DNA from: Octopus bimaculoides
Lineage: Eukaryota
DNA length: 64,000 nucleotides
Reading direction: 5' to 3'
Assembly: GCF_001194135.2 (NCBI RefSeq)
Contig: NC_069006.1
Location: forward strand, 6,077,411 to 6,141,410
Below the pieces are notes generated by a model. The model did not search any database. It had not been told where the DNA came from and worked only from the letters and a program-made list of their open reading frames with translations. Positions 12,141 through 45,377 of the stretch are shown piece by piece. Numbering within the stretch: position 1 is the first letter of the stretch; every line of letters starts with the position of its first letter. A program made the translations under genes and the position numbers.

Positions 12141-15100
12141 NNNNNNNNNNNNNNNNNNNNNNNNNNNNNNNNNNNNNNNNNNNNNNNNNNNNNNNNNNNN
12201 NNNNNNNNNNNNNNNNNNNNNNNNNNNNNNNNNNNNNNNNNNNNNNNNNNNNNNNNNNNNNNNNNNNNNNNNNNNNNNNNNNNNNNNNNNNNNNNNNNNN
12301 NNNNNNNNNNNNNNNNNNNNNNNNNNNNNNNNNNNNNNNNNNNNNNNNNNNNNNNNNNNNNNNNNNNNNNNNNNNNNNNNNNNNNNNNNNNNNNNNNNNN
12401 NNNNNNNNNNNNNNNNNNNNNNNNNNNNNNNNNNNNNNNNNNNNNNNNNNNNNNNNNNNNNNNNNNNNNNNNNNNNNNNNNNNNNNNNNNNNNNNNNNNN
12501 NNNNNNNNNNNNNNNNNNNNNNNNNNNNNNNNNNNNNNNNNNNNNNNNNNNNNNNNNNNNNNNNNNNNNNNNNNNNNNNNNNNNNNNNNNNNNNNNNNNN
12601 NNNNNNNNNNNNNNNNNNNNNNNNNNNNNNNNNNNNNNNNNNNAGAGAGAGGGTAGTCGCCCCCACCTGCTTATATCGGCGGTAGTAACTTTGGATGAGG
12701 ATGGCTGCTTCTATTTCTTTTTGCCTCTGCTGCAGTAACTGCTGCTTATCTCTATACTGTCGATATGCATTTTGGATCACTTTGGCCGCTTCGTACAGCT
12801 TTCGTTGCTCCTGATCTGCAACAACAAAACATCACCCAACACGGTTAGAGAAGACAATCACAAGAGGCTGCAGAGTAAAAGCAGGGTTGGTCTTCATCTC
12901 AATAAATCATGTAGGACTTAAGCTATATGAACAGTGCCGTTTAGTCAACTACTTGTGTGCCATAAATCTGGTCAATCTATGTTCACCTAGAGCTATACTC
13001 CAACAACAAACCCCTGATCTATCAAGAGCTGAGAAAATATTTGATATATTTGACATATGTATGTATGTATGTATGTATGTATATGTATGTATGTATGCAT
13101 GTGTATGTATGTATGTATGCATGTGTATGTATGTATGTATATGTATGTATGTATGTATGTATATGTATGTATGTATGTATGTATGTGTATGTATGTATGT
13201 ATGTGTATGTATGTATGTATGTATATGTATGTATGTATGCATATGTATGTATGTATACACACATATGTATATACATTTATATACACATACATATATATAT
13301 GCTCACATATGTACACAGACAGACGGACATACAATGAAATATTCTTTTCTACTCTAGGCACAAGGCCTGAAATTTTAGGGGAGGGGCCAGTCGATTAGAT
13401 CGACTCCAGTACGCAACTGGTACTTAATTTATCGACCCCGAAAGGATGAAAGGTAAAGTTGACCTCGGTGGAATTTGAGCTCAGAACACGAAGACAGACA
13501 AAATACCATTAAGCATTTCGCCCAGCGTGCTACACACAATGAAATATTGAGAGAAAAGCAGATTCCCTGTTAAATTTTTCTGTCAGTCTGCACTTTGGAG
13601 GACAATTAGAGTACAAAATCCATTATTTGTGAGCGGCATCTGACTGTCAAACATTTGTCATTCTGAGTGTTAGCAAGTAAGAACAGATTTTGAAAACAAA
13701 CAATTGAATGAATATTATATACATATATATATATATATATATATAGATACCTGATAATGTTAGCTGAGAGAAGTCCTTCTCCATGTACGTTGCTGGAGCA
13801 TTGAAGTACTCTGTAAAATCAGCAGTTGTAGGTGGTGGAGAATCTATCTGGAAATATGGACTATAAGGACTGGGTAGACAGGTGGAGTCTGGACTGACTG
13901 ATGAGGCAGGAGTACCCAGATCATTATAACTGAAAGCCAAATGGTTAGATTCATCATACAAACACCGGAAAACAGATTCTCTTTCAAAAGATGAAATCTA
14001 TAAACAACTGTAACAAATATAGCTGAGAAACTACCACCCATTATTCCATAAGTCTTTATTCCATTAACCATTACCTTCCATGTTCTATCTTTTACTTGTT
14101 TCAGTCACGAGATTATGGCCATGCTGGGGTACTGCTCTGAAGAATTGTTAGTGGAATAAATTGACCCCAGGACTCATTTGTTTCTTAAGCTCGGTACTTA
14201 TTGTATTAGTCTCTTTCACTGAACTGCTATGTTATGGGGACATAAACACACCAACACTGGTTGTCAAGTGGTGGTGAGAGTCAAATACAGACACAAACAC
14301 ACAAACATGTGATTGGCTTCTTTCAGTTTCCGGCTACCAAATCCACTCACAGCCTGAGGCTAAAATAGAAGAAACTTGCCCAAGGTGCTATGCAGTGGGA
14401 CTGAACCCGGAACCGTGAAGCTGAGATCAATTAGAAAGGTGTAATTAGCCAGAGATGTTGCTATGGTGACTGTAAGCTGATTAAATCCAGCATGGTGGTC
14501 TGGGGGAATTGTAAGAGTTACTGTACAGAATACATTGTAGTACTTGTAATTCTTTGTAGTTTGAGTTCAAATCTTGCCATGGGTTACCAGCTGCCATAGA
14601 TGGGACTGGAATCTCACCAGGTACATAGCCACAGTTAATGGTGGATAACCTTGGAGCAATGCTTGACACTGAACTGGCTGAGAGGAGACGATACGAGATG
14701 GCGATGCTGTGTATATGTATGAATGTGTGCACATTTGCCTGATAGATGGAAAAAGAAAGAAGCCTGTCATTTATGTATGTGTGTGTGTGTTAGTTGTAAA
14801 TGGCTGTCACTGTCACACTAATACTGCCATTCATTTTCAACAGTCTGCAAGAATTTGTGTGCCAATGGGGAAATATTACCTCACTTGGAACTGCCTAAAT
14901 AAACTCTGTCTGACCCATGCTAGCTTGGAAAAGTGGACATTAAAATTGTGATCACACACACACACACACACACACAGACGATGTTAGGAAGGGCGTCCTT
15001 GGCATTAGGAAGAACATCCTGTTATAGAAACCATGCTAAAGCTGACATGGAACATAACAAAGCTTTGTGACTCACCAGACCCCGGCAGACCATTCAACCC

Positions 15101-22500: not shown

Positions 22501-24996
22501 TCTCCCTCGAAACTGTTTCAGAGAAAAAGGTTGGTACATCATTTCTATAAGAAGGTTTTACACAGGGAAAAATCAATTAGATTCCTGTTATACAATGAAT
22601 TGGTAATTATAGTCCATCTCAGCAACAACTAACGATTTTCTGATGCTTTCTCACAGATTAAAATCCAACTTCATTGAGAAATGGTAGAACACATTCTTAA
22701 AGTGGATTATTCTCTTCTCTTTAATAAATAATTCAATTAAAACTGCAGACAGTGGCCACATAAGTTTACTAATGTACAGCTATAAAAGCTACTGTTACAA
22801 CACAATCAACCAACTTAATAATGTAGCTTCGTCAATATTCCTGGAACGTAACTGATTGATAAACTTCAACTTGCAGTCATTAATGTAATACCTCAGTATT
22901 ATATTATAATACTTTGCAAGCTGGCATAATTGCTAGAACAGTGGCAAAATACTTAGGGCCATTTCATATGTCTCTACGTTCTGAGTTCAAATCCCACTGA
23001 GGTCGACTTTGCCTTTCATCTGTTCAGGGTCAATAAAATAAGTATCAGTTGAATACTGGGGTTGAATTAATCAACATATGCGCTCCTCTAAGACTGCTGG
23101 CTGTGTGTCCAAATTTGAAATCGTAATTATTGTAATACCTTGATATCATCAGTCTATCATATGGGAGCCCCTTTTCACTAAATTCTAACTTATAATAGTT
23201 CAAACTAAAATTTAGCTTTCTTTTGTCTGGTGGCTCAGTCAAAGAGGAAAATGTTGTACCTGTGAATGTTGTATGATTTCTGAGAGTGGTGGAGGGCAAG
23301 GGTGGACTACTCACATTTCACAAGTCACAAGCTCTAATAAGGAGACCCTATGGTCAGGTAGTGGTGTTAAATCTAATTGCAGATTAGCTCTATCCCTCAT
23401 CCCACCTCACAAATAGCCACAGTCCACCTGATATATTTCCACAATGTTTCCTTACACTGAATTTCACTCCTACCAAAACTTCAGTCAACCTGAGGCCAAG
23501 GGAGATAACCAAAAAGTAAAGGTCAAAGAGCTGCAATGGTGGGATTGACCCCCAAACCATATGACTATGCAATCAACACAACCAGGCCAGCAGCCCCAGA
23601 AAAAAATACTTATTTCACTCATCTCACTGCCCTTCAAGTAGTAAATGGTTGAATGTAATTAGGGGATCAACCCTTTATACCCTTAAGATGAACAATATAA
23701 AAAACAGACATTAAGTGATGATGATGATGATAATGATGATGGAGGGTATCTGTAAAAGACCTACTTGTTCACTGGGGATTTCATTTTGGGTACATGTATT
23801 CAGTCGTTTCTCTAATTGCTCCAAACGTTCTAAGACCATCAGTCGTAATTGGTCTTCTGCAGAAATAAGAAACGACAACTAATTAGTACAATGACATTTA
23901 ATTACCATAGTGGAAAGTATCAAAAATTAATTGGTTGATGTAAAAGAGAGAGAGAGAGCCAAACTATCATTGCAAATTAGAGTTAATCAACAACAATGTT
24001 TTATGGGGCTGAAAACCTGATCTTTTCTGAAAAAATATACCAAATCAGCGTTTACTGTTAAAGGGTCAGTCTGTGTTTTGGTCACTCACTGTTTGATCAT
24101 TAAAAATTAGACATTGACACTGAATTTCAAATACTGAGGTATACACATACGCACACACGTATAATTAATAAACATCATTATTTAATGATATTAAAAGCGA
24201 TGTGTTTCTTGATTGGAATCAATATTACCTATCTCAGTGGTTCTTCACTGGTGTCCAGATAAGATTTTGTTGCTAAATTTATGGGAGATAAATTGGATAC
24301 ACTTCACAATACACTAAAGTTTTTAATAATTTTTTATATAATTCCTAATAATATTTAATTATAAAAGTATCTTTTATATACCGAATGGAGGCGGGGTGGG
24401 GGGCAGAGAGTCTACCTGAGTAAGACATGAATCAAAGGGGTCCATATATTGGTATCAAAGAAGTACAATAAATAAGGCATCACACACACACTACGGTTCT
24501 AGTTTATGGATATTTCAATATGCAGTGTTGCAATGTGCCTCTGGTTATGATGACATTAAACTGGAGTTCTTCAAAGGTTTTATACCAATGTGAGGATTAT
24601 TTCTACAAACTCATTACATTCTGAGTTCAAATCCTGCTGAGGTCAGCTTTGCCTGTCATTCTTTTGGGGTTGATAGAATAAAGTACCAGTCATGTATTGG
24701 AGTTAATGTAATTGACTTAACCCCAACCCTAAATCTGCTAGCCTTGTGTCAAAATTTGAAGCAATTATTAAAGGCACTGAGCTGGCGGCAGAATTGTTAA
24801 CATGCCGGACGAAATGCTAAGAAGCATTTCTTTATGTTATACATTCTGAGTTCAAATTCTACTGAAGTTGAATTTGCCTTTCATTCATTCAGGGTCAATG
24901 AAATATGTACCAGTTGGGCACTGGGGATGATGTAACTGACTTGATCCACATCCAAAATTATTCACCTTCTGCCAAAAATATGAAACCATTATCATA

Positions 24997-25031
<35 letters not shown>

Positions 25032-25718
25032 CATTATGAAGACAGCAAGCTGGCAGAATCATTAGCACACGGTGAAATGCTTAGCGGTATTTCGCCCATC
25101 ACTACGTTCTGAGTTCAAATTCCGCTGAGGTCAACTTTGCCTTTCATCCTTTCGGGGTCGATAAATTAAGTACCAGTCAAGTACTGGGGTTGATGTGATC
25201 AACTAGTCCCCCACCTGACAAAAATTCAGATCTTGTGCCTATAGTAGAAAAGATTATTATTAAGGTGGGAATCTGGCAGAATCATTAGCACGCCAGGTGA
25301 AATGCTTAATGGCATTTCGTCCATCTTCGCATTCTGAGTTCAAATCTGCAGAGGTTGACTTTGCCTTCATCCTTTCAGGGCTGATAAATTAAGTACCAGT
25401 GAAACACTGGGGGTGATNNNNNNNNNNNNNNNNNNNNNNNNNNNNNNNNNNNNNNNNNNNNNNNNNNNNNNNNNNNNNNNNNNNNNNNNNNNNNNNNNNN
25501 NNNNNNNNNNNNNNNNNNGAAACGTTAGCACGCTGGGCGAAATGCTTAGCGGTATTTCGTCTGCTGCTACGTTCTGAGTTCAAATTCCGCTGAGGTCGAC
25601 TTTGCCTTTCATCCTTTCGGGGGTCGATAAATTAAGTACCAGTCAAGTACTGGAATCGATCTAATCGACTGGCCCCACTTCCCCAAAAATTTCAGGCCTT
25701 GTGCCTAGAGCAGAAAAG

Positions 25719-30900: not shown

Positions 30901-33844
30901 TCACTTTTTCCTGCACCGTCAGTCATCCTCTATCACCCCCTTACCTCCTCCATCACTGGTCATCCCGCCACCCCTTACACCCATCCTTCAAACCCAACTG
31001 ATTCTTTACAGCTGCCACCTATTTTCCACTCTTGCAACTTTCACCCACCCACACACCCAGTTTGTCTGTCCTCACTCACTTCAACTCCCCTCATACCTTT
31101 AGGGACCACTTCAGATGCCCTCAGCATCACTATTATTATTTCTTTCCATCTCCACTCAATCACCCCCAACTATTTCTTCAAAAATACGAGCAGTCATGTT
31201 GCTCCTCTCCATTAAGAAACCTGTTCAGCTCTGGACCCTTCTCTCATACTTTTACTCCCCATTTCCTTGTATAATGCTGCCCTTCTTTGGGGGGTTCACA
31301 GTCTTGCAAGCCCCTTGGCAGCTTCACCTGGAACAGTGTGTAAAGTGGTTGGCATTAGGAAAGGCTTTGAGCTGTAGAGACCATGCCACAAGAGATGACT
31401 GGAAAATGATGCAATCCTCAGACTCATCAGATTCTGTTGAACCATCCAACTCATCATACAGTATGCAAAATAGGCATTAAATGACGACGACGATGACAAT
31501 GATGATGATGATGATTGTCATCATCATCATCGTCATAACCATTTGTTTTCCATGCTGGCAAGGGTTGGACAGTTTAACAGCACCAGGTTCCACAGACTGT
31601 TTTGGCATGGTTTCTACACCTGGATGCCTTTCCTAAAACCAAGCATTTTACAGAGTGTACTGGGTGCTTCTAATGTGGCACCAGCACTGACAGAGTCACC
31701 ATGTACCTTGCAAGACAACTGAGGGGAAGGAGAAGTATTGAGGAGGTGTGGCTTTGTGCCAGTTGATGAGAGATTAGAACTATAGATGGAACAATTATAA
31801 ATGTCTTGCTGTAGAGTAGATACATGGATGGCCCATATTTTAATATGTATTTCCCAGGTACCAGGTATGCGTTTAACATGTAAATTAGTCTACTTAACAG
31901 TGTTACACCACTAAACTTAGAGGCTGTTTAAGCAATGTTGGTTCGTGGATGGTTAATGGGTTGGATGTGGCACTGAAAAAGGAGCAATAACTCTTGCAGT
32001 ATTCATATACACCCATCACCTATTTTTCTATCTTCAGAGGTAATGACCAAGGCCTTTGGCATTATGTCATACTTGAAAAGAAGACCCATCAAGCCAAGCA
32101 AAATCGCAGTCATGGCAGATACCAGTGTCACGCAAATGGCACCCCTTACATTCTCAGAGTGGTTGGCGTTAGCAAGGGCATTCAGCCATAGAAAACTGTG
32201 CCAAATCACACTGGAATCTGGTGTAGCTTTCCAGCATGCCAGCCTGGTCAAAATATCCAACCCATGCCAGAATGGACAACGGACGTTAAATGATGATGAT
32301 GATGATGATGATCACATTGTTTACATAAATGTATACCTATATGAAACATCATAACTTTCAATGCTTGCTCTAAATTCTGTAGAAAATCTGTAGAGAATAA
32401 CTTAAAAGTGATTAAATTGCACGGCTAACACAAAAAGTAGGACGACAGAGCATCGACTGTTTAATATTTTTGGTGGTATATTAAGGTTGCAAAATGAAAC
32501 GCAGTGTCCCTACAAGCAAAGAAGGACAAAAAGAGGCAACGAGGCATTTTTATTATTTTTTCATTGTCAGAAAGTTACCAAAGTGATTGAAACACTGAAA
32601 AACAATGGAAGCAAGCAGGCAGAATTGTAAGAACATCAGAAAAAAAAATGCTTTGTGACTTTTCTTCAGGCTCCTTACCAACTGAGTTCAAATCTAGCTG
32701 AGGTTAATTTTGTCTTTCATCCCTCCAGGGGCCAGTAAAATAAAGTACTAATCTAGCACTGAGATCAGTGGTATCAAACAACATCCCCACTCACCACACT
32801 TAAAACTGCAGGCCATGGGCCTAAATCAGAAATTGCTATCACAGTTCAAAGAATTTACCAAAAAAAACAGGAGAGAAATGAGTTTTTGAGATGATAAGAC
32901 AACAAACCTGGCGCAAAGCAACGTAAAACTCCTGGTTGAACAAGAAGGGCTGGTACACTGATTCCACCAAATACACAGCTATAGGAACAACTTGTAGAAA
33001 ACCAAGGCCCTGTCACAAGAACCTTGGTACTGCCCTGTTAAGAGAAAAACAAGAATTATTCAGCAATGCTATTACGATTACACACAGTCATTTTTACTCT
33101 CTGTACTTCCCTGTTATCGACAGCCAAGTTTTTTTTATTTACTTAAGGGTTCTTTTATATTACACTTGTTCCAATCTGTGGACTGTGGCTATGCTGGGGC
33201 ACCACTTCAAAGAGCTTTAGTGGAACAAATCCATTTATTTTTCTAAAGCCTGGTACTTATTCTATTGGTATCTTTTAGCTGCACTGCTAAGTTACAGGGA
33301 TGTGAACAAACCAACACCAGTTGTCACGTGGTTATGGGGGACAAACACAATGACACACACACACACACATGGTAGGCTTCTTTCAGTTTCTGCCTACCAA
33401 GTCCACTCACAAGGGTTTGGTCAGCTTGAGACTATAATAGGAGGTACTTACCAAAGGTACCAAGGAGTGGGACTGAACTCAAGATCACATGGTTGGGAAG
33501 TAAGCCTCTTAATCACTCAGCCACACCTATAAACTATTTCACTTGTGTAACAGTTAATTGACAGACTTTCAGAATGGCTGCTACTACTTCATGAAGAAAG
33601 AAAAGGACAAGAAACTGAGGAACCGTTTTCCTTCTGTGAAAAAACTCTTTTACTTGTTTCAGCCATTTGACTGCGGCCATGCTGGAGCACTGCCTTTAAT
33701 TGAGCAAATCAACCCCATGACTTATTCTTTGTAAGCCTAGTACTTATTGTATCGGTCTCTTTTGCCGAATCGCTAAGTAACGGGGATGTAAACACACCAG
33801 CATCGGTTGTCAAGCGATGTTGGGGGGGACAAACACAGACACAC

Positions 33845-33877
<33 letters not shown>

Positions 33878-36800
33878 CAACGGGCTTTTTGCAGTTTCCG
33901 TCTATCAAATCCACTCGTCCAATCTTTTTTTACATTTTTACCCAAACAATTGGCTGCCAATAACAAAACAATATCTTACTTTTACTGTAGCACAAAAAAT
34001 ATATTTTAATTTTTAGAGAGGATTTAAAATTTAATCCACAGGGTTTATGAACTGGTATATGCCTAAGTATGAACATAAACATGTATTTGATGCTAGAAAT
34101 ATACCATTGTCTGCTTCAGTTTTGGTAAAGATTCAATAATTTCTTTTTTAGTCATCTTTATATATGACCACCACAGACTAAAATGGAATTGTGAAACCAA
34201 TGATACACCTCTTGAAAGGATTCAACTGACAAAAAGAAACTCCGTCTCTGACATGACCACTGTAGGTCAATGTTCAACAAATGTATTATGTCTGTTTGAA
34301 AGAGTCTCTGTTTTGAAAGAGACACCAAATCTTCATATTACATCCAACCATCTAAATGATAGGAATGATGCATTAGATATACAAGCTTGTATTTTCAATG
34401 CATATATAGTATATGATGATATCAGAGCTTGTAGTAAAGCTGGGATAGTGATGGCAGGAACATCATCATCATCATGATCGTTTAACGTCCGCTTTCCATG
34501 CTGGCATGGGTTGGATGATTTGACTGAGGACTGGTGAACCAGATGGCTACACCAGGCTCCAATCTGATTTGGCAGAGCTTCTACAGCTGGATGCCCTTCC
34601 TAACGCCAACAACTCCAAGAATGTAGTAGGTACTTTTACGTGCCACCAGCACGAAGGTCAGTCATAAGGTACTGGCAATGGCCACGCTCAAAATGGTGTA
34701 TTTTGCGTGCCACCTGCACAGGAGCCAGTCCAGCGGTACTGGCAATGAACTCGCTCGAATGTCTTTTCAAGTGCCAGGAAGGCACCGAAGATAATAGGCT
34801 GCTATGATTAGGGCTGCTTTGGGTCAAAATAACCACAGCAAATATTTCAAGTAAAGCTTTGAAAGGGGGAAAAAAAAAGTCACCTACCTCTGTATAGGAC
34901 CACTCTGGGCAAAAATCTGTAATTGGTGCTTGTTCAGAATTTGAGTGCGATTCTGTAGATTGCGAGATGCTTGAATCTGGTAGAATGGTATGCTGGGATT
35001 GTGACGATGGTTGCCCTTGCTGTCCCCCTGAATTGTGATGTGTCTGTGACTGCCCAGCCTGTTGTGTATGATGGTGTTGATGAGGATGAGTTTGTGGCTG
35101 CTGCTGCTGTGGCTGAGATTGTTGTTGTTGTTGTTGCTGTTGTTGCTCTTCCTGTTGTGCTGGATTTTGTTGCTGCGTTGTTCGCTGAGAGTCTAAACAG
35201 CTGGCGCAAGTGATGAAGTCACGGCTAATGCTATCAAATGTAGAATGATCAGATGAAGACGGGTTCATATTGGAATAAAGTTTCTCCAGATCGGGCAGAT
35301 CCAGAATGTCAAGGCTATCCAAACTGAGATCATTGTTCTGAAGAGAAGCAGTATTGAGAGTTAGGTTATCACAGTTAGTCAGGTCAGTGGAGACATCTTT
35401 GGAGTCCATAGAAGTGGAAGCGAAATCTGATGCCGAAGAAACTGTTGCCTGAAGGGTTTTTTGGACATCGTCATGAGAGAGATGGAAAGCAGGAGAGAAT
35501 ATGTTCATGGGTTCAGTCTTAATGTTGATTTCTTTTGGAACATCTTTCGAAGTATGACCCGTTTCTGAGATTTCTGTTGCCATAGGAACAGGTAACATCG
35601 CCCTATTAGAAGTGGAGTGCGTAATCGCGGAACTGGTTGAACTGGTGCTTCCTGGCTCGACTTTAATTTCTGTTCCCAAAGTGTGTGCCGATGTTCCTAA
35701 GGTGGGCTGTATGGCCGAACCGACCGGCTGTCCAGTGCTGGACATGGGTTGTTGGTTTGTCATGGAGTTCGAAATGATAGAGAGGGGGTTTGTGGTTTGG
35801 CCACTTACAATGAGTAAGCTGTTGCTGCCTTGGATGTTTGCAAAGTTAAAAATGACCGGAGTAGAGGGAGGCACAACATCCGTAGAAGTAGATGTCGAAG
35901 AGTCCGTGACACTAGTGGACGGTGTTGTAGTAATGAGCATACTTTCACTCACTGGTGCTGTTGTCGCTACTCCTGCTGCTGCCGCTGCTGCTGCCGCCGC
36001 TGCCGCCGCTGCCGCTCGGTTGGCCCGATTTCTCTGCAGCAATGAGACCAACCTGAAAAAGGAAGAAGGACAAGGAACTTGTTTACTTTCATCCTTCATC
36101 TATTTACATTGCCCTTATTATGTTTTACCACCCAGGACCCAACTCCATCAAAGTGAAACCCTTGCTGCCTTGCAATAGCTCGTGTATCTCAATGACCCTG
36201 AGAGCTATGCCAGTGGAGTGCAAGCTCATGGTAGGGCCTCACGTGCTGGACAGGTCAAAGGACAGAAGCCAGATTAATTTGGTTGACCACTTGCCAGAGG
36301 TAAAAGTGGGTTTGCATAAGGGGTCAACAACCCTAACTAGAAAAATGCAAAGTTACAGATGCATCAGTGGCAATTCAAAAACCAACAAGATATGGAAGAA
36401 GATCTTCCTTTGGGTCACGAGAGGAGATAGCTAGGCTACACTTTAAGGACAGCCCAGAACTGAGAATAGAGGAGAAAAGTGAACAATGGCCTATGCTCTA
36501 TACAGGGCCAGATTAAGACCTATAGAGGCCCCAATGCACTTAAAAGGTTTTGGTGTCCCCATATATATGTAATTCAAAATATGAACCATAATAAACCATA
36601 AAATGAATTTTTATTTCTCAAAATGAAACAAAACTAAGAGAAAGATGGAAAATAATGTTTAGTTTTGTATACTTCTCCTCTATTTATATTTGAAATGCTT
36701 TCTCCAACTCTTTTTTTGATTGTAAAGCCTTTGATAAAATCTTTGAAATTAGTTTTATATAACACATCTGCTTCTATGCTTAGTAGAAATAAGACATCCT

Positions 36801-37367
36801 GAATTTTATTTAACAAGTTTAAAGTGTATTTCTTTTGTGCCATAAACCATTTACCATTTCTGTGATGCTCCCACTTTCCTTTCCCTTGATGCCCTAAGCA
36901 TGTGCTTATTTTGCTCAATGGTTAATCCAGCACTGGCTCCATAGGAGGCAAAGGGCTTCAATAAATATGCAAACATCAAGGAGCCACATTAACCATATTT
37001 CCTTTTGGGATGTCAACCATTCTAGAATCGCTCCTTCCCTGCCTCACAAACATATTTCTTGCACACGGCAACGTTCCGATTGGATAGAAACGACATCAAT
37101 ATCAACAGTGTCAAAGGACACAGAACCCTCTTTAAACCCTCTTTAAACCCCCTAAAAAAAGTAGCACCTTTACCTGCCATGGTCGTTGCTGCTGTTACTA
37201 TTGACACTTCCTGTCGTCGGTTCAACTCCTTTGGGCGAAATCTTACAGCATTTGGAATGCAGGCAGTTTTTATCACAGGAGATGTCACATTTGTGGTTGC
37301 GAGATTTAACACGTTTCTCTTGGTATTCGATTAAGTGTTGAACAATAGCTTCAACTGTGTCTTGGAT
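546..37367 (-). CDS. CAMTA: Calmodulin-binding transcription activator (CAMTA), 5'-partial: join of 37367-37174, 36052-34888, 33034-32908, 28508-28371, 23856-23765, 22046-21862, 19858-19783, 18599-17630, 16115-15764, 13929-13751, 12815-12667, 10413-10217, 9264-9187, 753-546
   Basis: Manual splicing gives one open frame (4110 nt, 1369 aa plus stop); every intron is GT-AG with matching phase. Domain order TIG ([23 protein letters not shown]), [10 protein letters not shown] coil, ankyrin ([13 protein letters not shown]; CTPLMWACAKG), [15 protein letters not shown] and [19 protein letters not shown] followed by IQ motifs is diagnostic of animal CAMTA. Confidence 0.95.
989..1356 (+). mobile_element. 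Family-A SINE (tRNA-like head, internal GT repeat, ends gaaacaagtaaaa)
   Basis: Shared blocks gtggctgt.tggtaagaag, ggttcagt, gccccagc.tggccacagtc. Further copies at ~3165, 14085, 27205, 29100, 33165, 33650, 40042, 57975, 59478 and 61435. Confidence 0.8.
4400..5270 (-). mobile_element. Old RTE-like LINE remnant interrupted by a SINE
   Basis: Minus strand reads [15 protein letters not shown] (RTE ORF2-like AKEEWIEE motif); many stops. Confidence 0.45.
4754..4900 (-). mobile_element. 5'-truncated family-B SINE with 11-bp TSD
   Basis: acttctaaatt at both 4743-4753 and 4901-4911. Confidence 0.85.
5728..5842 (-). CDS. CAMTA: Candidate CAMTA cassette exon with two donors (31 nt, 5842-5812; or 115 nt, 5842-5728)
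   Basis: Pyrimidine-rich acceptor ...ctggtgcag|A is open in the phase 2 left by exon 9264-9187. Donors CAG|gtcagt and CAG|gtagta are both phase 0. GC-rich island with a GCA poly-Ala tract in an otherwise AT-rich intron. Confidence 0.62.
6849..7057 (-). mobile_element. Family-B SINE, full length
   Basis: Same unit; abuts (AAT)n at ~7062-7090. Confidence 0.8.
8121..8326. mobile_element. Degenerate hAT/Charlie-like MITE
   Basis: Left end caatggttctcaacct resembles CAGTGGTTCTCAACCT; the right end is degenerate. Confidence 0.35.
8339..8606. mobile_element. Fully palindromic fold-back MITE (~268 bp)
   Basis: Arms pair from ttgtgtctggggagagtcat / atgactctccccagacacaa inward to a 4-nt loop (caaa, 8471-8474), with an A/T-rich mismatched middle. 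Confidence 0.85.
9187..9264 (-). CDS. CAMTA: CAMTA exon [25 protein letters not shown]
   Basis: Long polypyrimidine acceptor ...cttccaaccag|G, donor AG|gtaaaa; 78 nt, phase 2 to 2. Completes the last IQ-like motif. Confidence 0.85.
10217..10413 (-). CDS. CAMTA: CAMTA exon: IQ motifs 3-5 ([22 protein letters not shown]...IIQQRF)
   Basis: Acceptor cctctccag|TAT, donor AG|gtgagg; 197 nt, phase 0 to 2. Confidence 0.94.
10981..11290. repeat. Two tandem diverged copies of a ~170-bp AT-rich repeat (probable MITE left ends)
   Basis: Blocks aatac..tttgtttcaattaattttgaaaatactg..taactt..ttattaa..aaattttga..tagatcactt occur twice. Confidence 0.55.
12667..12815 (-). CDS. CAMTA: CAMTA exon: IQ motifs 1-2 ([21 protein letters not shown]...[14 protein letters not shown])
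   Basis: Acceptor ttgttgcag|AT, donor CAG|gtgggg; 149 nt, phase 1 to 0. Confidence 0.95.
13057..13260. repeat. (TATG)n compound microsatellite
   Basis: Directly visible; sits ~240 bp upstream of the IQ1-2 exon acceptor. Confidence 0.95.
13341..13535 (-). mobile_element. Family-B SINE
   Basis: attcttttctactctaggcacaaggcc...cgaccccgaaaggatgaaagg...gagctcagaac. Confidence 0.8.
13751..13929 (-). CDS. CAMTA: CAMTA exon [10 protein letters not shown]...[10 protein letters not shown]
   Basis: Acceptor ggctttcag|T is the well-formed site matching phase 2; donor G|gtatct; 179 nt, phase 2 to 1. Confidence 0.9.
15764..16115 (-). CDS. CAMTA: CAMTA exon containing [17 protein letters not shown]
   Basis: Acceptor tttcttcag|AT, donor CG|gtaagt; 352 nt, phase 1 to 2. 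Confidence 0.93.
16335..16717 (+). mobile_element. tRNA-derived SINE, near full length
   Basis: A-box tggcccagtgg (16350-16360) and B-box-like gtttcaattcc (16394-16404), followed by a GC-richer body ending ...gacagagttccaaca. Confidence 0.72.
17630..18599 (-). CDS. CAMTA: CAMTA exon: ankyrin repeats followed by poly-Pro/poly-Ser/poly-Gly low-complexity region
   Basis: Acceptor catttcag|ATG, donor G|gtaagg; 970 nt, phase 0 to 1. Starts [18 protein letters not shown]...[19 protein letters not shown]. Confidence 0.94.
18875..19235 (+). mobile_element. 3' end of an RTE-type LINE with two C2H2-like zinc fingers and a (TATG)n tail
   Basis: [22 protein letters not shown] and [20 protein letters not shown], a short 3' UTR, then (TATG)-type repeats. 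No splice context or upstream start. Confidence 0.62.
19783..19858 (-). CDS. CAMTA: CAMTA exon: ankyrin linker ([25 protein letters not shown])
   Basis: Acceptor tttctttcag|A, donor CTG|gtaaga; 76 nt, phase 2 to 0. Confidence 0.94.
21862..22046 (-). CDS. CAMTA: CAMTA exon: first ankyrin repeat (...FEWRLV...[24 protein letters not shown])
   Basis: Acceptor tttcattttag|CCA, donor AG|gtaata; 185 nt, phase 0 to 2. Confidence 0.94.
23765..23856 (-). CDS. CAMTA: CAMTA exon: coiled segment [31 protein letters not shown]
   Basis: Acceptor atttctgcag|AA, donor CAA|gtaggt; 92 nt, phase 1 to 0. Contains the conserved LERLEQ motif. Confidence 0.93.
24600..25975 (+). mobile_element. Head-to-tail array of six ~215-bp SINE copies (family B) separated by (ATT)n
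   Basis: Repeated unit gctggcagaatc..ttagc...ctgagttcaaattc...tttgcctttcatcctttc...aagtaccag...ccttgtgcct at ~24600, 24771, 25040, 25262, 25519 and 25766; gap at 25418-25518. Confidence 0.88.
27205..27600 (-). mobile_element. Family-A SINE
   Basis: Reverse complement of the same blocks. Confidence 0.78.
27964..28250. mobile_element. piggyBac-type MITE (279 bp plus TTAA TSD)
   Basis: ttaacatgttaactgccaca (27964-27983) is the exact reverse complement of 28231-28250; both ends are TTAA. Confidence 0.82.
28371..28508 (-). CDS. CAMTA: CAMTA exon: end of TIG ([12 protein letters not shown]...LFEYKAREK...QQDWFSVD)
   Basis: Acceptor tttctttgtag|CA, donor G|gtgaga; 138 nt, phase 1 to 1. Confidence 0.93.
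29100..29487 (-). mobile_element. Family-A SINE
   Basis: Reverse complement of the same blocks. Confidence 0.78.
32908..33034 (-). CDS. CAMTA: CAMTA exon: TIG/IPT core ([42 protein letters not shown])
   Basis: Acceptor ctcttaacag|GGC, donor G|gtttgt; 127 nt, phase 0 to 1. Not in the ORF track; found by reading the minus strand. Confidence 0.95.
34463..34770 (-). mobile_element. Family-C SINE (aggaagggcatccagc core, (GAT)n tail)
   Basis: catcatcatc...tttaacgtccgctttccatgctggcatgggttgg...gctggatgcccttcctaacgccaac. Further copies at ~1570, 9690, 11625, 14940, 31290, 31520, 32040, 41375, 45040, 49100, 53200, 58308 and 60738. Confidence 0.82.
34888..36052 (-). CDS. CAMTA: CAMTA large exon: poly-Ala, Ser/Thr-rich, poly-Gln activation region and start of TIG domain
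   Basis: Acceptor cttccttttttcag|G, donor GAG|gtaggt; 1165 nt, phase 2 to 0. Ends [12 protein letters not shown]. Confidence 0.93.
36120..36480 (+). mobile_element. RTE-like LINE 5' remnant
   Basis: ggggtcaacaaccctaactagaaaaa resembles the RTE 5' motif GGGGCTAACAACCCCACCCTGTAAAA (recalled). Confidence 0.35.
36503..36935. mobile_element. hAT-type MITE (433 bp)
   Basis: TIRs cagggccagattaa / ttaatccagcactg (11/14 match); 8-bp TSD gctctata vs gctccata (7/8). Confidence 0.8.
37174..37367 (-). CDS. CAMTA: CAMTA exon: linker just after the CG-1 domain ([27 protein letters not shown]...[12 protein letters not shown]...NDHG)
   Basis: Acceptor tttcccccccag|ATC, donor AG|gtaaag; 194 nt, phase 0 to 2. 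Resembles the vertebrate CAMTA1 segment EQLVQQILDSHQ...RTHNC...RIISPKVEP (recalled). Confidence 0.88.
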
Positions 37368-38252
37368 CTGGGGGGGAAACAAAACAAAAAAAGAACAAAG
37401 GAAACCCAATCAGTTAAAAAAAAACAACAAAAAACAAAACAAAACGAAACTCCAGATATTTTATTGAATTCAAATTCTGATGATTGATGAATATCTTTAC
37501 ATGAAACTCTCAACAATAATGAATCCATAGCAGTAGCAACAACAACAATAAAAAAAACAAAAAACAAAAGCAGTTGACTTCAATGGAAGCATCAAAGGAG
37601 ATCAGACAATGAAAATCTAAGAGATAAAGGATATTTGCAATTAAGAAAAACAAGATACAATCTTTTTATATTTTTCTATGTTTTCTTCTCGTCAAACATT
37701 TTAACATTTCCTCTTTCCAACCTCTTCTTTTGTTTTTTGTTTTTTTCTCCTCCTCCCTCTGTTTCTTTGCTTCTCCTCCTCCTTCAACCATGCACCCCCC
37801 ACCCCAAATCCATCCTCCCACCACCACCACCACCACCACCACCTCAGTCATGCTTATCTTTTCTTCTTACTCAGTCTTTTATGTTCCTTCATGTCTTATC
37901 TCAGATGTTGTTCCATTTTCCAATGGGTTCCTTGTGACATTTTGATCAATTAGAATCTGACACAGTCATCACCGTCATCATCATCATCATCATCATCATC
38001 ATTATAGTCGTCATCACTATGGTAATGATGATGATAACCATCATAATCATAACTGCCATGCCAACGTCATACCATCATTGCCACACCACCACCACTGTCA
38101 TCATCATCATCATCAAGAACAGACCAGCAATAAGAAGATAGCAACACTGCTGTTGCTTTACACCATTGAATAACATCATCATCGTCATCATCATCATCAC
38201 CACACCCACCACCTTAACCATCATTTATGCCACCACTAATCATCATCTAGAA

Positions 38253-38466
38253 CAAACAACATCCCCACTAACCACACTTAAAACTGCAGGCCATGGGCCT
38301 AAATCAGAAATTGCTATCACAGTTCAAAGAATTTACCAAAAAAAAACAGGAGAGAAATGAGTTTTTGAGATGATAAGACGACAAACTTGGCGCAAAGCAA
38401 CGTAAAACTCCTGGTTGAACAAGAAGGGCTGGTACACTGATTCCACCAAATACACAGCTATAGGAA
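38253..38466 (-). pseudogene. Near-identical duplicate of 32775-32987 (3' 71+ nt of the TIG exon plus its donor and ~130 nt of intron)
   Basis: Direct alignment by eye: 214 vs 213 bp, 3 substitutions and 1 extra A in an A-run; same orientation as the source. Confidence 0.93.
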
Positions 38467-38879
38467 AAGACTTGTTATGAGAAGATAACAACAATCGTTT
38501 TATACCATTAAACCACATCACCTATCAACACCATGTATGTTTCAAGACTCCCTATTCTCTATGTTTACAGGGCAAAAGCTCATAGTTGATTCATTTGATC
38601 CTAGTTTATTATTAGTATTGTTTTGAGTGCAGAAATATGAATGACCTCAACGAGACACGAAACATGATGAATTTCTAGAAACGAGGGATTTTCTGCAATG
38701 GTTTGAGTGGGTATGTTGGTATAATGGTAGCACACTTCTTATGGAAACAGAGAGGTGTGGGTCTGAGTCCCATGAGTACGGAAAGCCCACTTTTCTCCAT
38801 TGAGGGCTTTTATGCCCCAATATTAGACTATCTTCTTTAGTCAGTGCACAGTGAACACTTTTAAGCTTTAAGCTTCTGA

Positions 38880-38924
<45 letters not shown>

Positions 38925-38926
<2 letters not shown>

Positions 38927-40043: not shown

Positions 40044-40505
40044 GGCATGGCTGTGTGGTAAGAAGTTTGTTTCCCAACCACATGGTTCCAGGTTCAGTCC
40101 CATTGCATGGCATCTTGGGCAACTGTCTTCCACTATAGCTGACCAAAGACTCGTGAATGAATTTGGTTGGCTGAAACTGGAAGAAGCCCCATTGTGTATA
40201 TATATATATATATAAAAACACAATATGTGTGTGTGTGTGTGTGTGTTTGTGTTTGTTCCCCACCACTGTTTGACAAATGGTGTTGGTGTGTTTATGTCCC
40301 CATAACTTAGCGGTTCAGCAAAAGAATCTGATAGGATAAGTACTAAGCTTAGCAGAAAAATTAAGTCCTGGGGTTGATTCATTCAGCGAAAATTCTTCAA
40401 GACATTGCCCCAGCATGGCCACAGTTTAATGACTGAAACAAGTAAAAGATGTTGATAGATAGATAGATAGATAGATGGATAGATAGATAGATAGATAGAT
40501 AGATG

Positions 40506-40604
<99 letters not shown>

Positions 40605-40625
40605 GGATAGATAGATAGATAGATA
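40042..40625 (+). mobile_element. Family-A SINE with expanded (GATA)n tail
   Basis: Full body 40042-40450 runs directly into ~170 bp of (GATA)n. Confidence 0.82.
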
Positions 40626-41374
40626 TGTAGGTAGGTAGGTAAGTAGCAGATAACTAGATTGNNNNNNNNNNNNNNNNNNNNNNNNNNNNNNNNNNNNNNN
40701 NNNNNNNNNNNNNNNNNNNNNNNNNNNNNNNNNNNNNNNNNNNNNNNNNNNNNNNNNNNNNNNNNNNNNNNNNNNNNNNNNNNNNNNNNNNNNNNNNNNN
40801 NNNNNNNNNNNNNNNNNNNNNNNNNNNNNNNNNNNNNNNNNNNNNNNNNNNNNNNNNNNNNNNNNNNNNNNNNNNNNNNNNNNNNNNNNNNNNNNNNNNN
40901 NNNNNNNNNNNNNNNNNNNNNNNNNNNNNNNNNNNNNNNNNNNNNNNNNNNNNNNNNNNNNNNNNNNNNNNNNNNNNNNNNNNNNNNNNNNNNNNNNNNN
41001 NNNNNNNNNNNNNNNNNNNNNNNNNNNNNNNNNNNNNNNNNNNNNNNNNNNNNNNNNNNNNNNNNNNNNNNNNNNNNNNNNNNNNNNNNNNNNNNNNNNN
41101 NNNNNNNNNNNNNNNNNNNNNNNNNNNNNNNNNNNNNNNNNNNNNNNNNNNNNNNNNNNNNNNNNNNNNNNNNNNNNNNNNNNNNNNNNNNNNNNNNNNN
41201 NNNNNNNNNNNNNNNNNNNNNNNNNNNNNNNNNNNNNNNNNNNNNNNNNNNNNNNNNNNNNNNNNNNNNNNNNNNNNNNNNNNNNNNNNNNNNNNNNNNN
41301 NNNNNNNNATATATATATAATTTTCTTTTTTTAAAAAGAAATTTAAAGTGCCTATGTGATAATGGTAAAGCTAC

Positions 41375-41646
41375 TTTTGGGCCTCCTGTGCCTGTGGCAT
41401 GTAAAAAGCACCATCTGAATGTGGCTGATGCTAGTACTCCCTGACGGGCCCCCATGCTGGTGGCACATAAAAAGCACCCACTACACTCTTGGAGTGGTTG
41501 GCGTTAGGAAGGGCATCCAGCTGTAGAAACATTGCCAGATCAGATTGGAGCCTGGTGCAGCCTTCTGGCTCTCCAGACCTCAGTTAAATAGTCCAACCCA
41601 TGCCAGCATGGAAAGCGGACGTTAAATGACGATCATGATGATGATG
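41375..41646 (+). mobile_element. Family-C SINE
   Basis: ...ggagtggttggcgttaggaagggcatccagctgtagaaac...gcatggaaagcggacgttaaatgac, then (GAT)n. Confidence 0.82.
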
Positions 41647-43559
41647 ATATATTATATGTATGTGTGTATATATGTTTGTGTGTGCATGTTTTTGTTTCTG
41701 CAGTTATTCTGATGTTGTAGAAAGAATCAGCAGTGTGGGGTCTGAAAACATCTGGGGTTTTGACAGTGACTGGCACAATGTGATAGCAGCCCCGGTGAGG
41801 CTCCTGTATGAACTGAAGAGAAACTTTGCTGCTGCTGCTGCTTCAGTAATCTGGCAATATTTAATGATGATAAAACAGTTCTACTTTACTTGGAAAAATT
41901 ATCTTAATTCTCTTAAACCCCAGACCTAAAAGAACCTACCACACTACATATAACCCCACTCTGACCTGCAGGTCAGCTGTGTCCTCTCTGGGCCTTTTCC
42001 ACTGCTACTGTAATGGCCTCTGCTCCGAGGATTTGATTGGACTTAGGCTGTCTCTGCTCAGTCACTCTCATCTTCCTCATCCCTCCCTCATCTCCCCCAT
42101 CACTGCATTCTCCCTCACCAGTTCCACCCAGTCCTTCCTTCCTTAGGTATCATCCCTCTGGAACTCCCTCCTGGTTCGGGTCTTTTTTGCAGGCGTTGAT
42201 TTACAAATGTTCAACAAGAATATTAATAACATCAATCTCAGTGAACAAAGGCTATGGGCATGGGCCCCTTCATCAGCATCCAGCAAACGAAAATAATAAC
42301 AAACATATACAACACTGTGAGTCTGTGTATAGTGTAGCTATTAGAGAGGTAGTGAGAGAGAGAGAGGGAGGAAAGAGAGGATGGAATGAGAGAGGGGAGA
42401 GAGAGAGAGAGAGAGTGGAGTGAAACAAAGAACAAAAAAGAAGAAATGAAGGAAGAAAGAAGATTGAAAATGAAAGTAGAGAGAAATATTGTCAAGAAGA
42501 AGGAAATGAAAGAATAAGAGAGAGAGAGAGAGAGANNNNNNNNNNNNNNNNNNNNNNNNNNNNNNNNNNNNNNNNNNNNNNNNNNNNNNNNNNNNNNNNN
42601 NNNNNNNNNNNNNNNNNNNNNNNNNNNNNNNNNNNNNNNNNNNNNNNNNNNNNNNNNNNNNNNNNNNNNNNNNNNNNNNNNNNNNNNNNNNNNNNNNNNN
42701 NNNNNNNNNNNNNNNNNNNNNNNNNNNNNNNNNNNNNNNNNNNNNNNNNNNNNNNNNNNNNNNNNNNNNNNNNNNNNNNNNNNNNNNNNNNNNNNNNNNN
42801 NNNNNNNNNNNNNNNNNNNNNNNNNNNNNNNNNNNNNNNNNNNNNNNNNNNNNNNNNNNNNNNNNNNNNNNNNNNNNNNNNNNNNNNNNNNNNNNNNNNN
42901 NNNNNNNNNNNNNNNNNNNNNNNNNNNNNNNNNNNNNNNNNNNNNNNNNNNNNNNNNNNNNNNNNNNNNNNNNNNNNNNNNNNNNNNNNNNNNNNNNNNN
43001 NNNNNNNNNNNNNNNNNNNNNNNNNNNNNNNNNNNNNNNNNNNNNNNNNNNNNNNNNNNNNNNNNNNNNNNNNNNNNNNNNNNNNNNNNNNNNNNNNNNN
43101 NNNNNNNNNNNNNNNNNNNNNNNNNNNNNNNNNNNNNNNNNNNNNNNNNNNNNNNNNNNNNNNNNNNNNNNNNNNNNNNNNNNNNNNNNNNNNNNNNNNN
43201 NNNNNNNNNNNNNNNNNNNNNNNNNNNNNNNNNNNNNNNNNNNNNNNNNNNNNNNNNNNNNNNNNNNNNNNNNNNNNNNNNGTGTGTGTGTGTGTGTGTG
43301 TGAGACTGTGTGGGAAATGGTGAGCAACTGGCACAAGTGTTTTTGCTTTCATAGAGTCTTTCATGGTTTTTTTTTTTTTGGAGAGGGGTACAGGGTGTTT
43401 GTAATTCAGACAAAAATACATGAGAAATAAAAGCAAAAACAAAATAAAATCTAAAGTAAAACAAAAACAAAAAAAACTAAGTAAATGTTTTCTTCAAAAT
43501 AATTTTCCAATAATATTAATAATAATAATAATGATACTAGAAATAATAGCAAATATTTT

Positions 43560-43980: not shown

Positions 43981-45332
43981 CCTTTCTAGTAAAGGCACAA
44001 GGCCTGAAATTTGGTGAGAGGGGACTAGTTGATTATATCGACCCCAGTGTGTAACTCTTGGTGGAATTTGAACTGAGAATGTAAAGACAGACGAAATGGT
44101 ATTAAGCATCTTGTCAGGCATGCTAACCATTCTGTCAGCTCAGTATTATAATAATATAATAGAATATTAACAATAAGAGCATTTCTTTATCTGCCTCATC
44201 ATACTGAAAGAAGAGAGAAAGCAACACTGAGTGAGAGAAGGTGACAATATTATTGTCACCTTTTCCTCGCTTCCTAATAATTACTAAATAATTACTAAAT
44301 ATAAACGAGTCTGTCACCAACAGAAGGCAATAGCTAGTGTAATCAGGTATAAAAAATACATTAGAAAACTCACTCCCTCTCTCTTCAACAAGAACCATGC
44401 CAGATGTCAACGATACTTGAAATAAGAAAGAAAGAAAGACATGACTTTCTATGGGAAATTCTAAAATTCTCAGGACTTGTACAGACTTTCGACTAACAAT
44501 CAATATTTATTGATTTTTTAAATTTATTTATTTATTTATGTACATATATATTTTATTGTTAATATCTTATGTAATCTAATATTGCGTATGGAAACTAACC
44601 AATATTATATCCAGTCTCGGCAGCAAGTTCTATGCCGGCTGATATCGAAACTATTCTTGTAGCAGAATACAAAACTTAAGACAATATCACTGATGAAGAG
44701 AACATTGTGGTTGCACGGTGAGAAGTTTGCATTCCAACCACATGATTGACCGGAGGCTATAGTAGAGGACACTTGCGATGCAGTGGGACTGGGCCCAGAA
44801 CCATGTGGTTGGGAAGGAAACTTCTTGCCACACATCCACACCTATAATAAGTTGAATTTGGGTTAGGGTTAGGGTTAGGGGATGGAAAAAAGATATGTAT
44901 ATTTTCACTATTTATTGTTACATTTTAAAATTTAGAATAGCTTTCTAAAATGCTATAATGTTTAATATATATATATATAGCACCCGTGAAATCATAATGG
45001 TGGCTCTTGCCAGTAGCATGATCTTCAAATGTTGGGCCTCATGGAGGTGACAGGTGACTCAGACCTTTGGGAACATGGTGTGCTTGAGAAGGGTCACCAA
45101 GCCAAGTGAAATCATAGTCACGGCTGTTGCCAGTGTCATGTAAATAGTACCCATGCTGGTGGCACAGAAAAAGCACCCATTACACTCTTGGAATGGTTGG
45201 CATTAGGAAGGGCAACCAGCCATAGAAACCATGCCAAATCAGACTGGAACTTGATGCAGCTCTCTGGCTTACCAGTTCCAGTCAAACAGTCCAATCCATG
45301 CCAGCATAGAAAGCAGACATTAAATGATGATG

Positions 45333-45377
<45 letters not shown>

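What the first reader, a model, noticed from the sequence alone, without database searches (positions are those of the whole stretch)
38253..38466. Recent partial copy of the TIG exon with a newly formed 3' splice site: candidate poison exon
Seen: a 214-bp copy (~98% identical) of 32775-32987 sits ~5.5 kb away, in the intron upstream of the first visible exon. It keeps the donor GT (CCAA|gtttgt versus CCAG|gtttgt in the source). Its new left junction reads tcttttcctatag|, so a formerly exon-internal AG now has a pyrimidine tract. The result is a 71-nt pseudo-exon (38457-38387). Inference: inclusion between the CG-1 exons and exon 37367 shifts the frame and stops at 37333-37331. That would cause NMD, or a protein with only the DNA-binding domain (potential dominant negative). 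No TE ends flank the copy, which suggests templated repair or template switching.
Basis: partly seen in the sequence, partly recalled or inferred. Interest (0 to 1): 0.74.

Follow-up and report, generated by a model that had tools for sequence, protein, structure and literature searches.

The report
Partial exon copy in CAMTA intron
A 223-bp piece of a CAMTA gene (the end of one coding exon plus the start of the following intron) has been copied into an upstream intron of the same gene; the copy is real in the sequence, but its splice signals are weaker than every real site in the gene, so it is most likely a harmless repair scar and not a regulatory "poison exon".

Summary
Positions 38253-38475 copy 32775-32995 in the same orientation (217/223 identical). 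This is the only pair of at least 80 bp at 90% identity or more in the 64-kb window, and both members lie in one gap-free contig. The gene, on the minus strand, is a CAMTA homologue. The copy carries the last 88 nt of the first TIG exon plus 133 nt of intron, including an old SINE fragment. It sits 1 kb upstream of exon A (37367-37174), in an intron of more than 26 kb. An outgroup locus shows that 32.9 kb is the source.

The "new" acceptor is inherited exon sequence and scores the same in the source. The donor lost its -1 G. Both sites score below all 10 real acceptors and 9 real donors of this gene. The visible intron holds 235 equal-or-better AG..GT decoy pairs. There is no target-site duplication, poly(A) or TE terminus.

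Best reading: a young templated insertion made by break repair or template switching, silent in splicing. No transcript or read data could be tested.

The parts
38253..38475 (-). The copy: 223 bp. In gene sense it is 88 nt of the 3' part of the TIG exon, then the donor, then 134 nt of intron-derived sequence.
   Evidence: blastn 97.3% over 223 columns; pairwise alignment; list of differences
32775..32995 (-). The source segment: exon C positions 32995-32908 plus intron 32907-32775.
   Evidence: The outgroup L001 has its only TIG exon at this relative position, downstream of exon B.
38387..38457 (-).
   Evidence: Coordinates verified. PWM scores: acceptor 0.60, donor -1.41.
38337..38410 (-). 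An alternative 74-nt AG..GT pair inside the copy that scores better (acceptor 3.31, donor 1.48). It also shifts the frame. The source carries near-identical sequence over this stretch, so the same pair should be present there; no exon of the gene model uses it.
   Evidence: Local scan
37954..38252 (.). Degenerate (ATC)n/(ACC)n microsatellite-rich tract that abuts the intron-side end of the copy.
   Evidence: TRF rows 37966-38052, 38098-38115 and 38174-38199; sequence
32611..32835 (+). Old SINE of the (ATT)n-tailed family, antisense to the gene. The breakpoint at 32775 lies inside it, so only its last ~60 nt were copied.
   Evidence: Window self-blast; multiple alignment with copies at 25.0-25.7 kb and 56.9-57.3 kb
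37174..37367 (-). CAMTA exon A (194 nt, starts in phase 0: [18 protein letters not shown]...), the first coding exon downstream of the copy.
   Evidence: Translation and splice sites; tblastn with P0003 and P0010
37331..37333 (-). The TAA reached if a 71-nt (or 74-nt) pseudo-exon is spliced in before exon A.
34888..36052 (-). CAMTA exon B (1165 nt, low-complexity linker ending ...[12 protein letters not shown]).
   Evidence: 75% identical to P0001; blastn to L001
32908..33034 (-). CAMTA exon C, the first TIG/IPT exon (127 nt, [11 protein letters not shown]...LRCFAP). Its donor CAG|gtttgt is the weakest real donor found in the gene.
   Evidence: Pfam PF01833 E=1.3e-8

Best explanation
This is a real, evolutionarily young, non-transposon 'templated insertion'. 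A 223-bp stretch spanning the exon C / intron boundary of the CAMTA gene was copied, in the same orientation, into a break 5.48 kb away in the large upstream intron, at the edge of an (ATC)n-rich tract.

Shown here: the copy itself, its polarity, its breakpoints (one inside an exon, one inside an old SINE), and the absence of a target-site duplication, a poly(A) tail and TE termini.

Inferred: the mechanism. It was either double-strand-break repair using a nearby ectopic template, or replication template switching (the FoSTeS/MMBIR type). The template was either the DNA in cis or the gene's own unspliced pre-mRNA, as in class-2 templated sequence insertions.

The copy lacks exon C's strong acceptor. 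It retains only an internal AG with a mediocre pyrimidine tract, plus a donor that was already the weakest in the gene and has since lost its -1 G. It therefore most likely behaves like the hundreds of other intronic decoy AG..GT pairs: it is ignored by the spliceosome or included only at noise level. It is selectively neutral.
For: The identity and uniqueness of the pair. Both copies are in one gap-free contig with unique flanks. The outgroup has a single TIG exon, downstream of exon B. The breakpoint lies inside a SINE, not at its end. There is no TSD above chance: the longest shared 5-mers equal the chance mode. No homology extends beyond the breakpoints: 466/2000 and 298/500 shuffles do as well. 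Acceptor score is 0.60 against 1.9-12.6 for the real sites, and donor score is -1.41 against 1.7-5.2. There are 235 equal-or-better decoy pairs in 23.1 kb of the same intron. The class definitions for templated insertions come from PMC5110952.
Against: No reads, no second assembly of the same species, and no empty site were available. As a result neither the reality of the insertion nor the junction microhomology could be examined. The splice scoring uses a simple PWM with generic metazoan frequencies recalled from the literature; it is neither MaxEnt nor a species-specific model. The pseudo-exon body comes from a constitutive exon and may carry splicing enhancers that a site-only score ignores. 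The weakest real acceptor of the gene (1.87) is not far above the candidate (0.60). DNA and RNA templates cannot be told apart.
Confidence: 0.7

Rival explanations
1. Assembly artefact. In a heavily gapped short-read scaffold, a gap next to the (ATC)n tract was filled with reads from the source region 5.5 kb away, for example through mate pairs or the other haplotype.
For: There are 12 N-runs in 64 kb, and the nearest is 750 bp from the copy. The copy abuts a microsatellite tract that is hard to assemble. The 5.5-kb distance is in the range of mate-pair inserts (own knowledge).
Against: Source and copy lie in the same gap-free 13.7-kb contig, with unique sequence on both sides of the copy. They differ at 6 positions (2.7%), which a recruited-read artefact would not produce. 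No other such duplicate exists in the window.
Confidence: 0.1
2. Functional poison exon. The 71-nt pseudo-exon is spliced in between the CG-1 exons and exon A in a regulated way. This gives an NMD target or a protein with only the CG-1 domain.
For: An AG and a GT are present 71 nt apart. The frame shifts, and the TAA at 37333-37331 lies 157 nt upstream of the next junction, with at least 10 junctions downstream. The exon body derives from a real exon.
Against: Both sites are weaker than all real sites of the gene. The acceptor is no better than the same AG in the source exon. The donor lost its -1 G. There are 235 equal-or-better decoys in the same intron. The copy is lineage-specific and about 2-3% diverged, with no counterpart in the 10 kb of L001 upstream of exon B, whereas regulated poison exons are typically conserved (own knowledge). 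There is no transcript evidence.
Confidence: 0.04
3. Remnant of a tandem duplication. The 5,478-bp unit 32775-38252 (exons A, B and C) was duplicated head to tail. Nearly all of the second unit was then deleted, leaving its first 223 bp.
For: The copy starts exactly one unit length after the source start, so the left end of the copy directly follows 38252, which is the geometry of a tandem duplication.
Against: It needs two events. The intermediate would duplicate 1,486 nt of coding exons (lengths), which is not a multiple of 3 and so shifts the frame. No trace of the rest of the second unit remains beyond 38475.
Confidence: 0.06
4. Retrotransposon-mediated copy. A LINE reverse transcriptase that primes on (GAT)n-type tails copied a fragment of unspliced CAMTA pre-mRNA (template switch or trans-mobilisation). 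This would leave the copy followed, in gene sense, by a (GAT)n-rich tail.
For: In gene sense the copy is directly followed by GAT/GGT-rich sequence. One SINE family in the window ends in (GAT)n, for example 32247-32312. The copy has the gene's orientation.
Against: There is no TSD above chance. The 'tail' is 300 bp long, highly degenerate and interrupted by unique sequence, whereas the copy is 97% intact, so the tract looks older than the insertion. No TE body lies between the copy and the tract.
Confidence: 0.05

Closest known systems
Class 2 templated sequence insertions (TSI/TSIP; Onozawa & Aplan, PMC5110952)
   Same: A short (about 0.2 kb) patch copied from elsewhere in the genome. The donor locus is retained. 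There is no target-site duplication and no poly(A), and the template is often transcribed or intronic sequence.
   Different: Here the donor is only 5.5 kb away, in the same gene and the same orientation, which fits DNA template switching in cis equally well. The NHEJ features at the junctions (microhomology, untemplated bases) cannot be scored without the empty site. The RNA origin proposed for human class 2 events is untested here.
Replication template-switch insertions (FoSTeS/MMBIR-type templated insertions, e.g. PMC8421209)
   Same: A local template within a few kb, non-TE breakpoints, and mismatches concentrated at one end of the insert (2 of the 6 differences lie in the last 9 nt).
   Different: Those are mostly described as somatic or pathogenic events and are often shorter or complex. 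No microhomology could be demonstrated here.
Poison (NMD-coupled) cassette exons
   Same: In silico, inclusion would shift the frame and place a stop more than 50 nt upstream of an exon junction.
   Different: Both splice sites are weak, there is no conservation and no transcript evidence. Known regulated poison exons are usually old and highly conserved (own knowledge).
Intronic pseudo-exons / decoy splice-site pairs (e.g. PMC2095810, PMC1934990 for background)
   Same: An AG..GT pair of exon-like length in a long intron, with sub-threshold sites. It is one of 235 comparable pairs in this intron.
   Different: Its body derives from a genuine exon of the same gene, so it may carry enhancer motifs that ordinary decoys lack.
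Tandem exon duplication giving mutually exclusive or extra exons
   Same: Intragenic duplication of exon sequence.
   Different: The duplication is partial (88 of 127 nt, without the acceptor) and not tandem. It is placed two exons upstream and would be read out of frame.

Membership tests
Poison exon (NMD-coupled cassette exon) | Functional 3' and 5' splice sites flanking the exon | tested here: inconclusive
   An AG and a GT are present, but the PWM scores (0.60 and -1.41) are below all 10 real acceptors and 9 real donors of the gene, and 235 decoys are equal or better. The scoring model is generic.
Poison exon (NMD-coupled cassette exon) | Inclusion introduces a premature stop upstream of a downstream exon junction | tested here: met
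   TAA at 37333-37331, 157 nt before the exon A/B junction. At least 10 further exons lie downstream.
Poison exon (NMD-coupled cassette exon) | Observed inclusion in transcripts, stabilised when NMD is blocked | not testable with these tools
   No RNA data exist for this species. The exact-ORF look-ups and a positive control all returned nothing.
Poison exon (NMD-coupled cassette exon) | Evolutionary conservation of the exon and its flanks | tested here: not met
   No second TIG-like fragment occurs in the 10 kb upstream of exon B in the related locus L001. The copy is only 2.7% diverged from its source, so it is lineage-specific.
Class 1 TSIP / LINE-mediated retrocopy | Target-site duplication of at least 5 bp at both junctions | tested here: not met
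   The longest k-mer shared by the flanks is 5 nt, not at the junctions, and equals the chance mode.
Class 1 TSIP / LINE-mediated retrocopy | Untemplated poly(A) (or element-specific) tail at the 3' end | tested here: not met
   There is no A-run. The adjacent GAT-rich tract is 300 bp, degenerate and interrupted.
Class 2 TSI (DSB-repair patch) | Donor sequence retained, with no TSD and no poly(A) | tested here: met
   The source is intact at 32775-32995. No TSD or tail was found.
Class 2 TSI (DSB-repair patch) | NHEJ-type junctions (microhomology, microdeletion, untemplated bases) | not testable with these tools
   This needs the pre-insertion (empty) allele. The only related locus is too diverged for intron alignment.
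Class 2 TSI (DSB-repair patch) | RNA template | not testable with these tools
   The copy contains an unspliced exon-intron boundary, which is compatible with either pre-mRNA or DNA.
Transposable-element insertion or transduction | Copy bounded by element termini | tested here: not met
   One breakpoint lies inside exon C. The other lies inside a SINE, about 60 nt from its 3' end.
Tandem exon duplication | Whole exon with both splice sites, adjacent to the parent exon | tested here: not met
   Only 88 of the 127 exon nucleotides were copied, and the acceptor is absent. The copy lies two exons upstream.
CAMTA gene (host gene identity) | TIG/IPT domain followed by ankyrin and IQ regions, collinear with CAMTA proteins | tested here: met
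   Pfam TIG PF01833, E=1.3e-8. tblastn of six full-length CAMTA-like proteins maps 12 collinear exons from 37367 to 10216. The CG-1 domain is not in the window.

The most novel reading that the evidence does not exclude
A gene has seeded its own upstream intron with a fragment of one of its exons, possibly through repair templated by its own nascent pre-mRNA. The resulting exon-derived pseudo-exon (38457-38387 or 38410-38337) is spliced in at a low but real level. That would be the very first step in the birth of an NMD-coupled or truncating (CG-1-only) CAMTA isoform.
Probability: 0.05. Interest if true: 0.5.

Novelty: new member of a known kind. Interest (0 to 1): 0.15.

Why it matters
As it stands this is an ordinary small structural variant inside an intron. 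It is useful as a clean, datable example of non-TE templated insertion in what appears to be a mollusc genome (inferred only from the closest protein relatives and the repeat content; the organism was not identified here), and as a presence/absence marker. It would matter more if transcripts showed that the exon-derived fragment is spliced in. That would document how a frame-breaking cassette exon can arise in one step from a gene's own sequence. Nothing found here supports that step.

Tried and rejected
(1) Independent confirmation of the junctions. I ran exact look-ups of the two ORFs that span the junctions (38333-38521 on the minus strand, 38166-38360 on the plus strand). Both returned nothing. 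The positive control, the 487-aa exon-B ORF, also returned nothing, so this species is simply absent from the collection and the test is uninformative.

(2) Presence/absence in a relative. The only related genomic locus, L001 (ENA ERZ21867824), is 77-82% identical in exons. Its introns cannot be aligned, and exon A is not within 10 kb upstream of exon B there. It serves only as an outgroup for polarity. L002 and L003 are 2-kb contigs covering only exon B.

(3) Homology beyond the breakpoints and residual SINE body at the target. Neither was significant. An 'ACTAATC..TCTAG' resemblance in the left flanks is at chance level.

(4) Target-site duplication: none above chance.

(5) CG-1 exons upstream of the copy. 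A recalled human CG-1 probe and six full-length CAMTA proteins found none in 38476-64000.

(6) The idea that two substitutions clustering near the donor show selection against splicing was rejected. Only one falls in the 9-nt motif, and P is about 0.15 for at least 1 of 4.

(7) Recursive splice site was rejected. The acceptor is followed by CTGTGT, not GT.

(8) A literature search for a CAMTA poison exon found nothing relevant.

Full report
OBSERVATION. The sequence at 38253-38466 is, as claimed, a near-identical direct copy of 32775-32987. The repeat finder reports two in-register blocks of 99% and 98% identity, separated by a 1-nt length difference in a homopolymer run. Gapped blastn extends the match to 38253-38475 against 32775-32995: 223 columns, 97.3%, E=1e-103. 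Base by base there are four substitutions (32792C/38270A, 32901A/38380G, 32908C/38387T, 32988C/38467A) and two single-base insertions in the copy (38338, 38469). A megablast of the window against itself finds no other non-low-complexity pair of at least 80 bp at 90% identity or more. All SINE pairs are 89% or less. So this is a distinct, young event and not an assembly habit. The window is a gapped scaffold with 12 N-runs. Source and copy nevertheless lie in one uninterrupted contig (25519-39225), and the copy has unique sequence on both sides.

HOST GENE. On the minus strand the window carries a CAMTA homologue. I defined three exons:
- exon A, 37367-37174 (194 nt, phase-0 start, [18 protein letters not shown]...);
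- exon B, 36052-34888 (1165 nt, low-complexity linker ending [12 protein letters not shown]);
- exon C, 33034-32908 (127 nt, [11 protein letters not shown]...LRCFAP).

Pfam calls TIG/IPT on exons C and D (E=1.3e-8). P0003, an intron-free fragment from a distant relative, supports the A-B-C joins. Six full-length CAMTA-like proteins from the representative search map twelve collinear exons from 37367 down to 10216. Upstream of exon A they hit nothing except the copy itself. A CG-1 probe also finds nothing.

POLARITY. A related genomic locus, L001 (ENA ERZ21867824, contig ctg113424l; exons 77-82% identical), has one TIG exon only, downstream of exon B. So 32.9 kb is the parent and 38.3 kb the derivative. 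In the three-way alignment the outgroup has G at donor -1 and 'CAAGCTGTTCCTATAG' inside the exon. The copy's CAA|gt and 'TCTTTTCC' are therefore derived states.

ANATOMY OF THE UNIT. In gene sense the copy starts 39 nt into exon C. It runs through the last 88 exon nucleotides and the donor, and ends 133 nt into the intron. The last ~60 nt of that intron stretch are the 3' end of an old SINE, of an (ATT)n-tailed family, lying antisense to the gene. Alignment with five other copies shows that the breakpoint at 32775 lies inside the element and not at its edge. At the target, the intron-side end abuts a 300-bp degenerate (ATC)n/(ACC)n tract, and the exon-side end abuts unique sequence. No homology continues beyond either breakpoint (466/2000 and 298/500 shuffles score as well). 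There is no target-site duplication above chance, no A-tail and no TE terminus.

Part of the copied material is TE-derived, however, and the target is next to a microsatellite.

THE SPLICE-SITE CLAIM. The coordinates and arithmetic are correct. The AG is at 38459-38458 and the GT at 38386-38385, giving a 71-nt exon. With the phase-0 junction that exon A requires, the reading is [35 protein letters not shown], with TAA at 37333-37331, 157 nt before the A/B junction.

The acceptor, however, is not created by the junction. The homology runs through it, and the same AG in the source exon is preceded by 'TTCTACAAGTTGTTCCTATAG'.

I scored sites with a simple position weight matrix. Its frequencies are approximate metazoan values that I recalled from the literature; they are not species-specific and this is not MaxEnt. 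On this matrix the copy's acceptor and the same AG in the source both score 0.60. The donor drops from 1.74 (already the weakest real donor in the gene) to -1.41, because of the derived -1 G>A change.

I then defined seven more junctions from contiguous protein alignments. The real acceptors (n=10) score 1.87-12.6 and the real donors (n=9) score 1.74-5.20. The candidate is below all of them on both sides. In the 23.1 kb of non-N intron visible upstream of exon A, 116 AGs and 278 GTs score at least as well. They form 235 AG..GT pairs of 50-250 nt (101 distinct acceptors) that equal or beat the candidate on both sites. Even within the copy, another pair (38410-38337, 74 nt, scores 3.31 and 1.48) is better. 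Because the source sequence is near-identical over this stretch, the same pair should be present there, and no exon of the gene model uses it.

On site strength alone the pseudo-exon is an ordinary decoy. What the copy lacks is exon C's strong acceptor (11.5). The one feature that could favour it, enhancer content inherited from a real exon, could not be measured.

MECHANISM. Several features exclude a TE insertion or transduction, and also a class-1 (LINE-type) templated insertion as defined in PMC5110952. These are the breakpoints inside an exon and inside a SINE, the absence of a TSD and a tail, and the retained donor locus. The event fits a class-2-like patch at a double-strand break, or a replication template switch to a site 5.5 kb away in cis. 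The same orientation and the unspliced exon-intron boundary allow either DNA or the gene's own pre-mRNA as template, and I cannot separate these.

Two of the six differences lie in the last 9 nt at the exon-side end. This is compatible with error-prone synthesis at a junction, but it is not proof.

A tandem duplication of the 5,478-bp unit followed by deletion has the right geometry. It needs two events, though, and a frame-breaking intermediate: the three exons total 1,486 nt.

A (GAT)n-primed retrocopy is conceivable, because the copy is followed in gene sense by GAT-rich sequence and one local SINE family has (GAT)n tails. That tract, however, is long, degenerate and interrupted, so it looks older than the 97%-intact insert.

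Divergence of about 1.8% in substitutions implies an age of the order of a few million years under typical metazoan neutral rates. This is my rough inference, and no rate is known for this species.

WHAT COULD NOT BE DONE. No reads, transcripts or conspecific assemblies were reachable. Exact look-ups of junction-spanning ORFs and of a control ORF all returned nothing, so they say nothing either way. The related locus is too diverged to provide an empty site.

VERDICT. The origin inference (templated repair or template switch, not a TE) is reasonable. The 'newly formed 3' splice site' is incorrect, and the 'poison exon' reading has a low prior. This is a new instance of a known kind of small structural change and is of low general interest unless transcripts show inclusion.

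Noticed in passing
window 54789-55379 (+): A 197-aa open frame with a GIY-YIG nuclease domain (Pfam PF01541, E=6e-7) inside the large CAMTA intron. It is probably the endonuclease part of a Penelope-like or other retroelement remnant.
   Followed up: partly
window 56238-56537 (+): A 100-aa open frame (…ILWDFDFQIDKVLEHRRPDIV…) that resembles the C-terminal region of invertebrate non-LTR reverse-transcriptase ORFs, from memory. It has no Pfam hit.
   Followed up: partly
window 24600-25716 and 56900-57330: Clusters of an (ATT)n-tailed SINE family. At least five copies are spaced about 240 bp apart at 24.6-25.7 kb, next to the gap at 25418-25518, and two are at 56.9-57.3 kb on the other strand.
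   Followed up: partly
window 32125-32312, 34458-34637, 41460-41648, 45159-45337, 60880-61002: A second SINE family ending in (GAT)n, in both orientations and 76-89% alike. It includes an inverted pair at 34461-34637 / 41470-41646 (89%) that brackets exons A and B and the copy.
   Followed up: no
window 32900-32908 vs L001 15615-15624: The donor of the TIG exon is CAG|gtttgt here, the weakest real donor found in the gene, but CTG|gtaagt in the related species.
   Followed up: partly
L001 1-10041: In the related species, exon A is not found within 10 kb upstream of exon B, whereas the two are 1.1 kb apart in the window. Either the intron sizes differ greatly or exon A has diverged.
   Followed up: no
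window 34888-36052: Exon B carries a 14-residue poly-Ala run and long Gln-rich runs. It is only about 75% identical to the related species at protein level, whereas the TIG exon is 97.6% identical.
   Followed up: no
window 12141-12643 and eleven other N-runs: There are twelve assembly gaps (10-748 N). One begins 24 bp from the end of IQ-region exon K (12815-12667), and two flank a (GATA)n array at 40454-40650.
   Followed up: no
window 38880-38925: A perfect (ATT)15 lies 400 bp from the copy. This is the tail type of the local SINE family, but no recognisable SINE body lies next to it.
   Followed up: no
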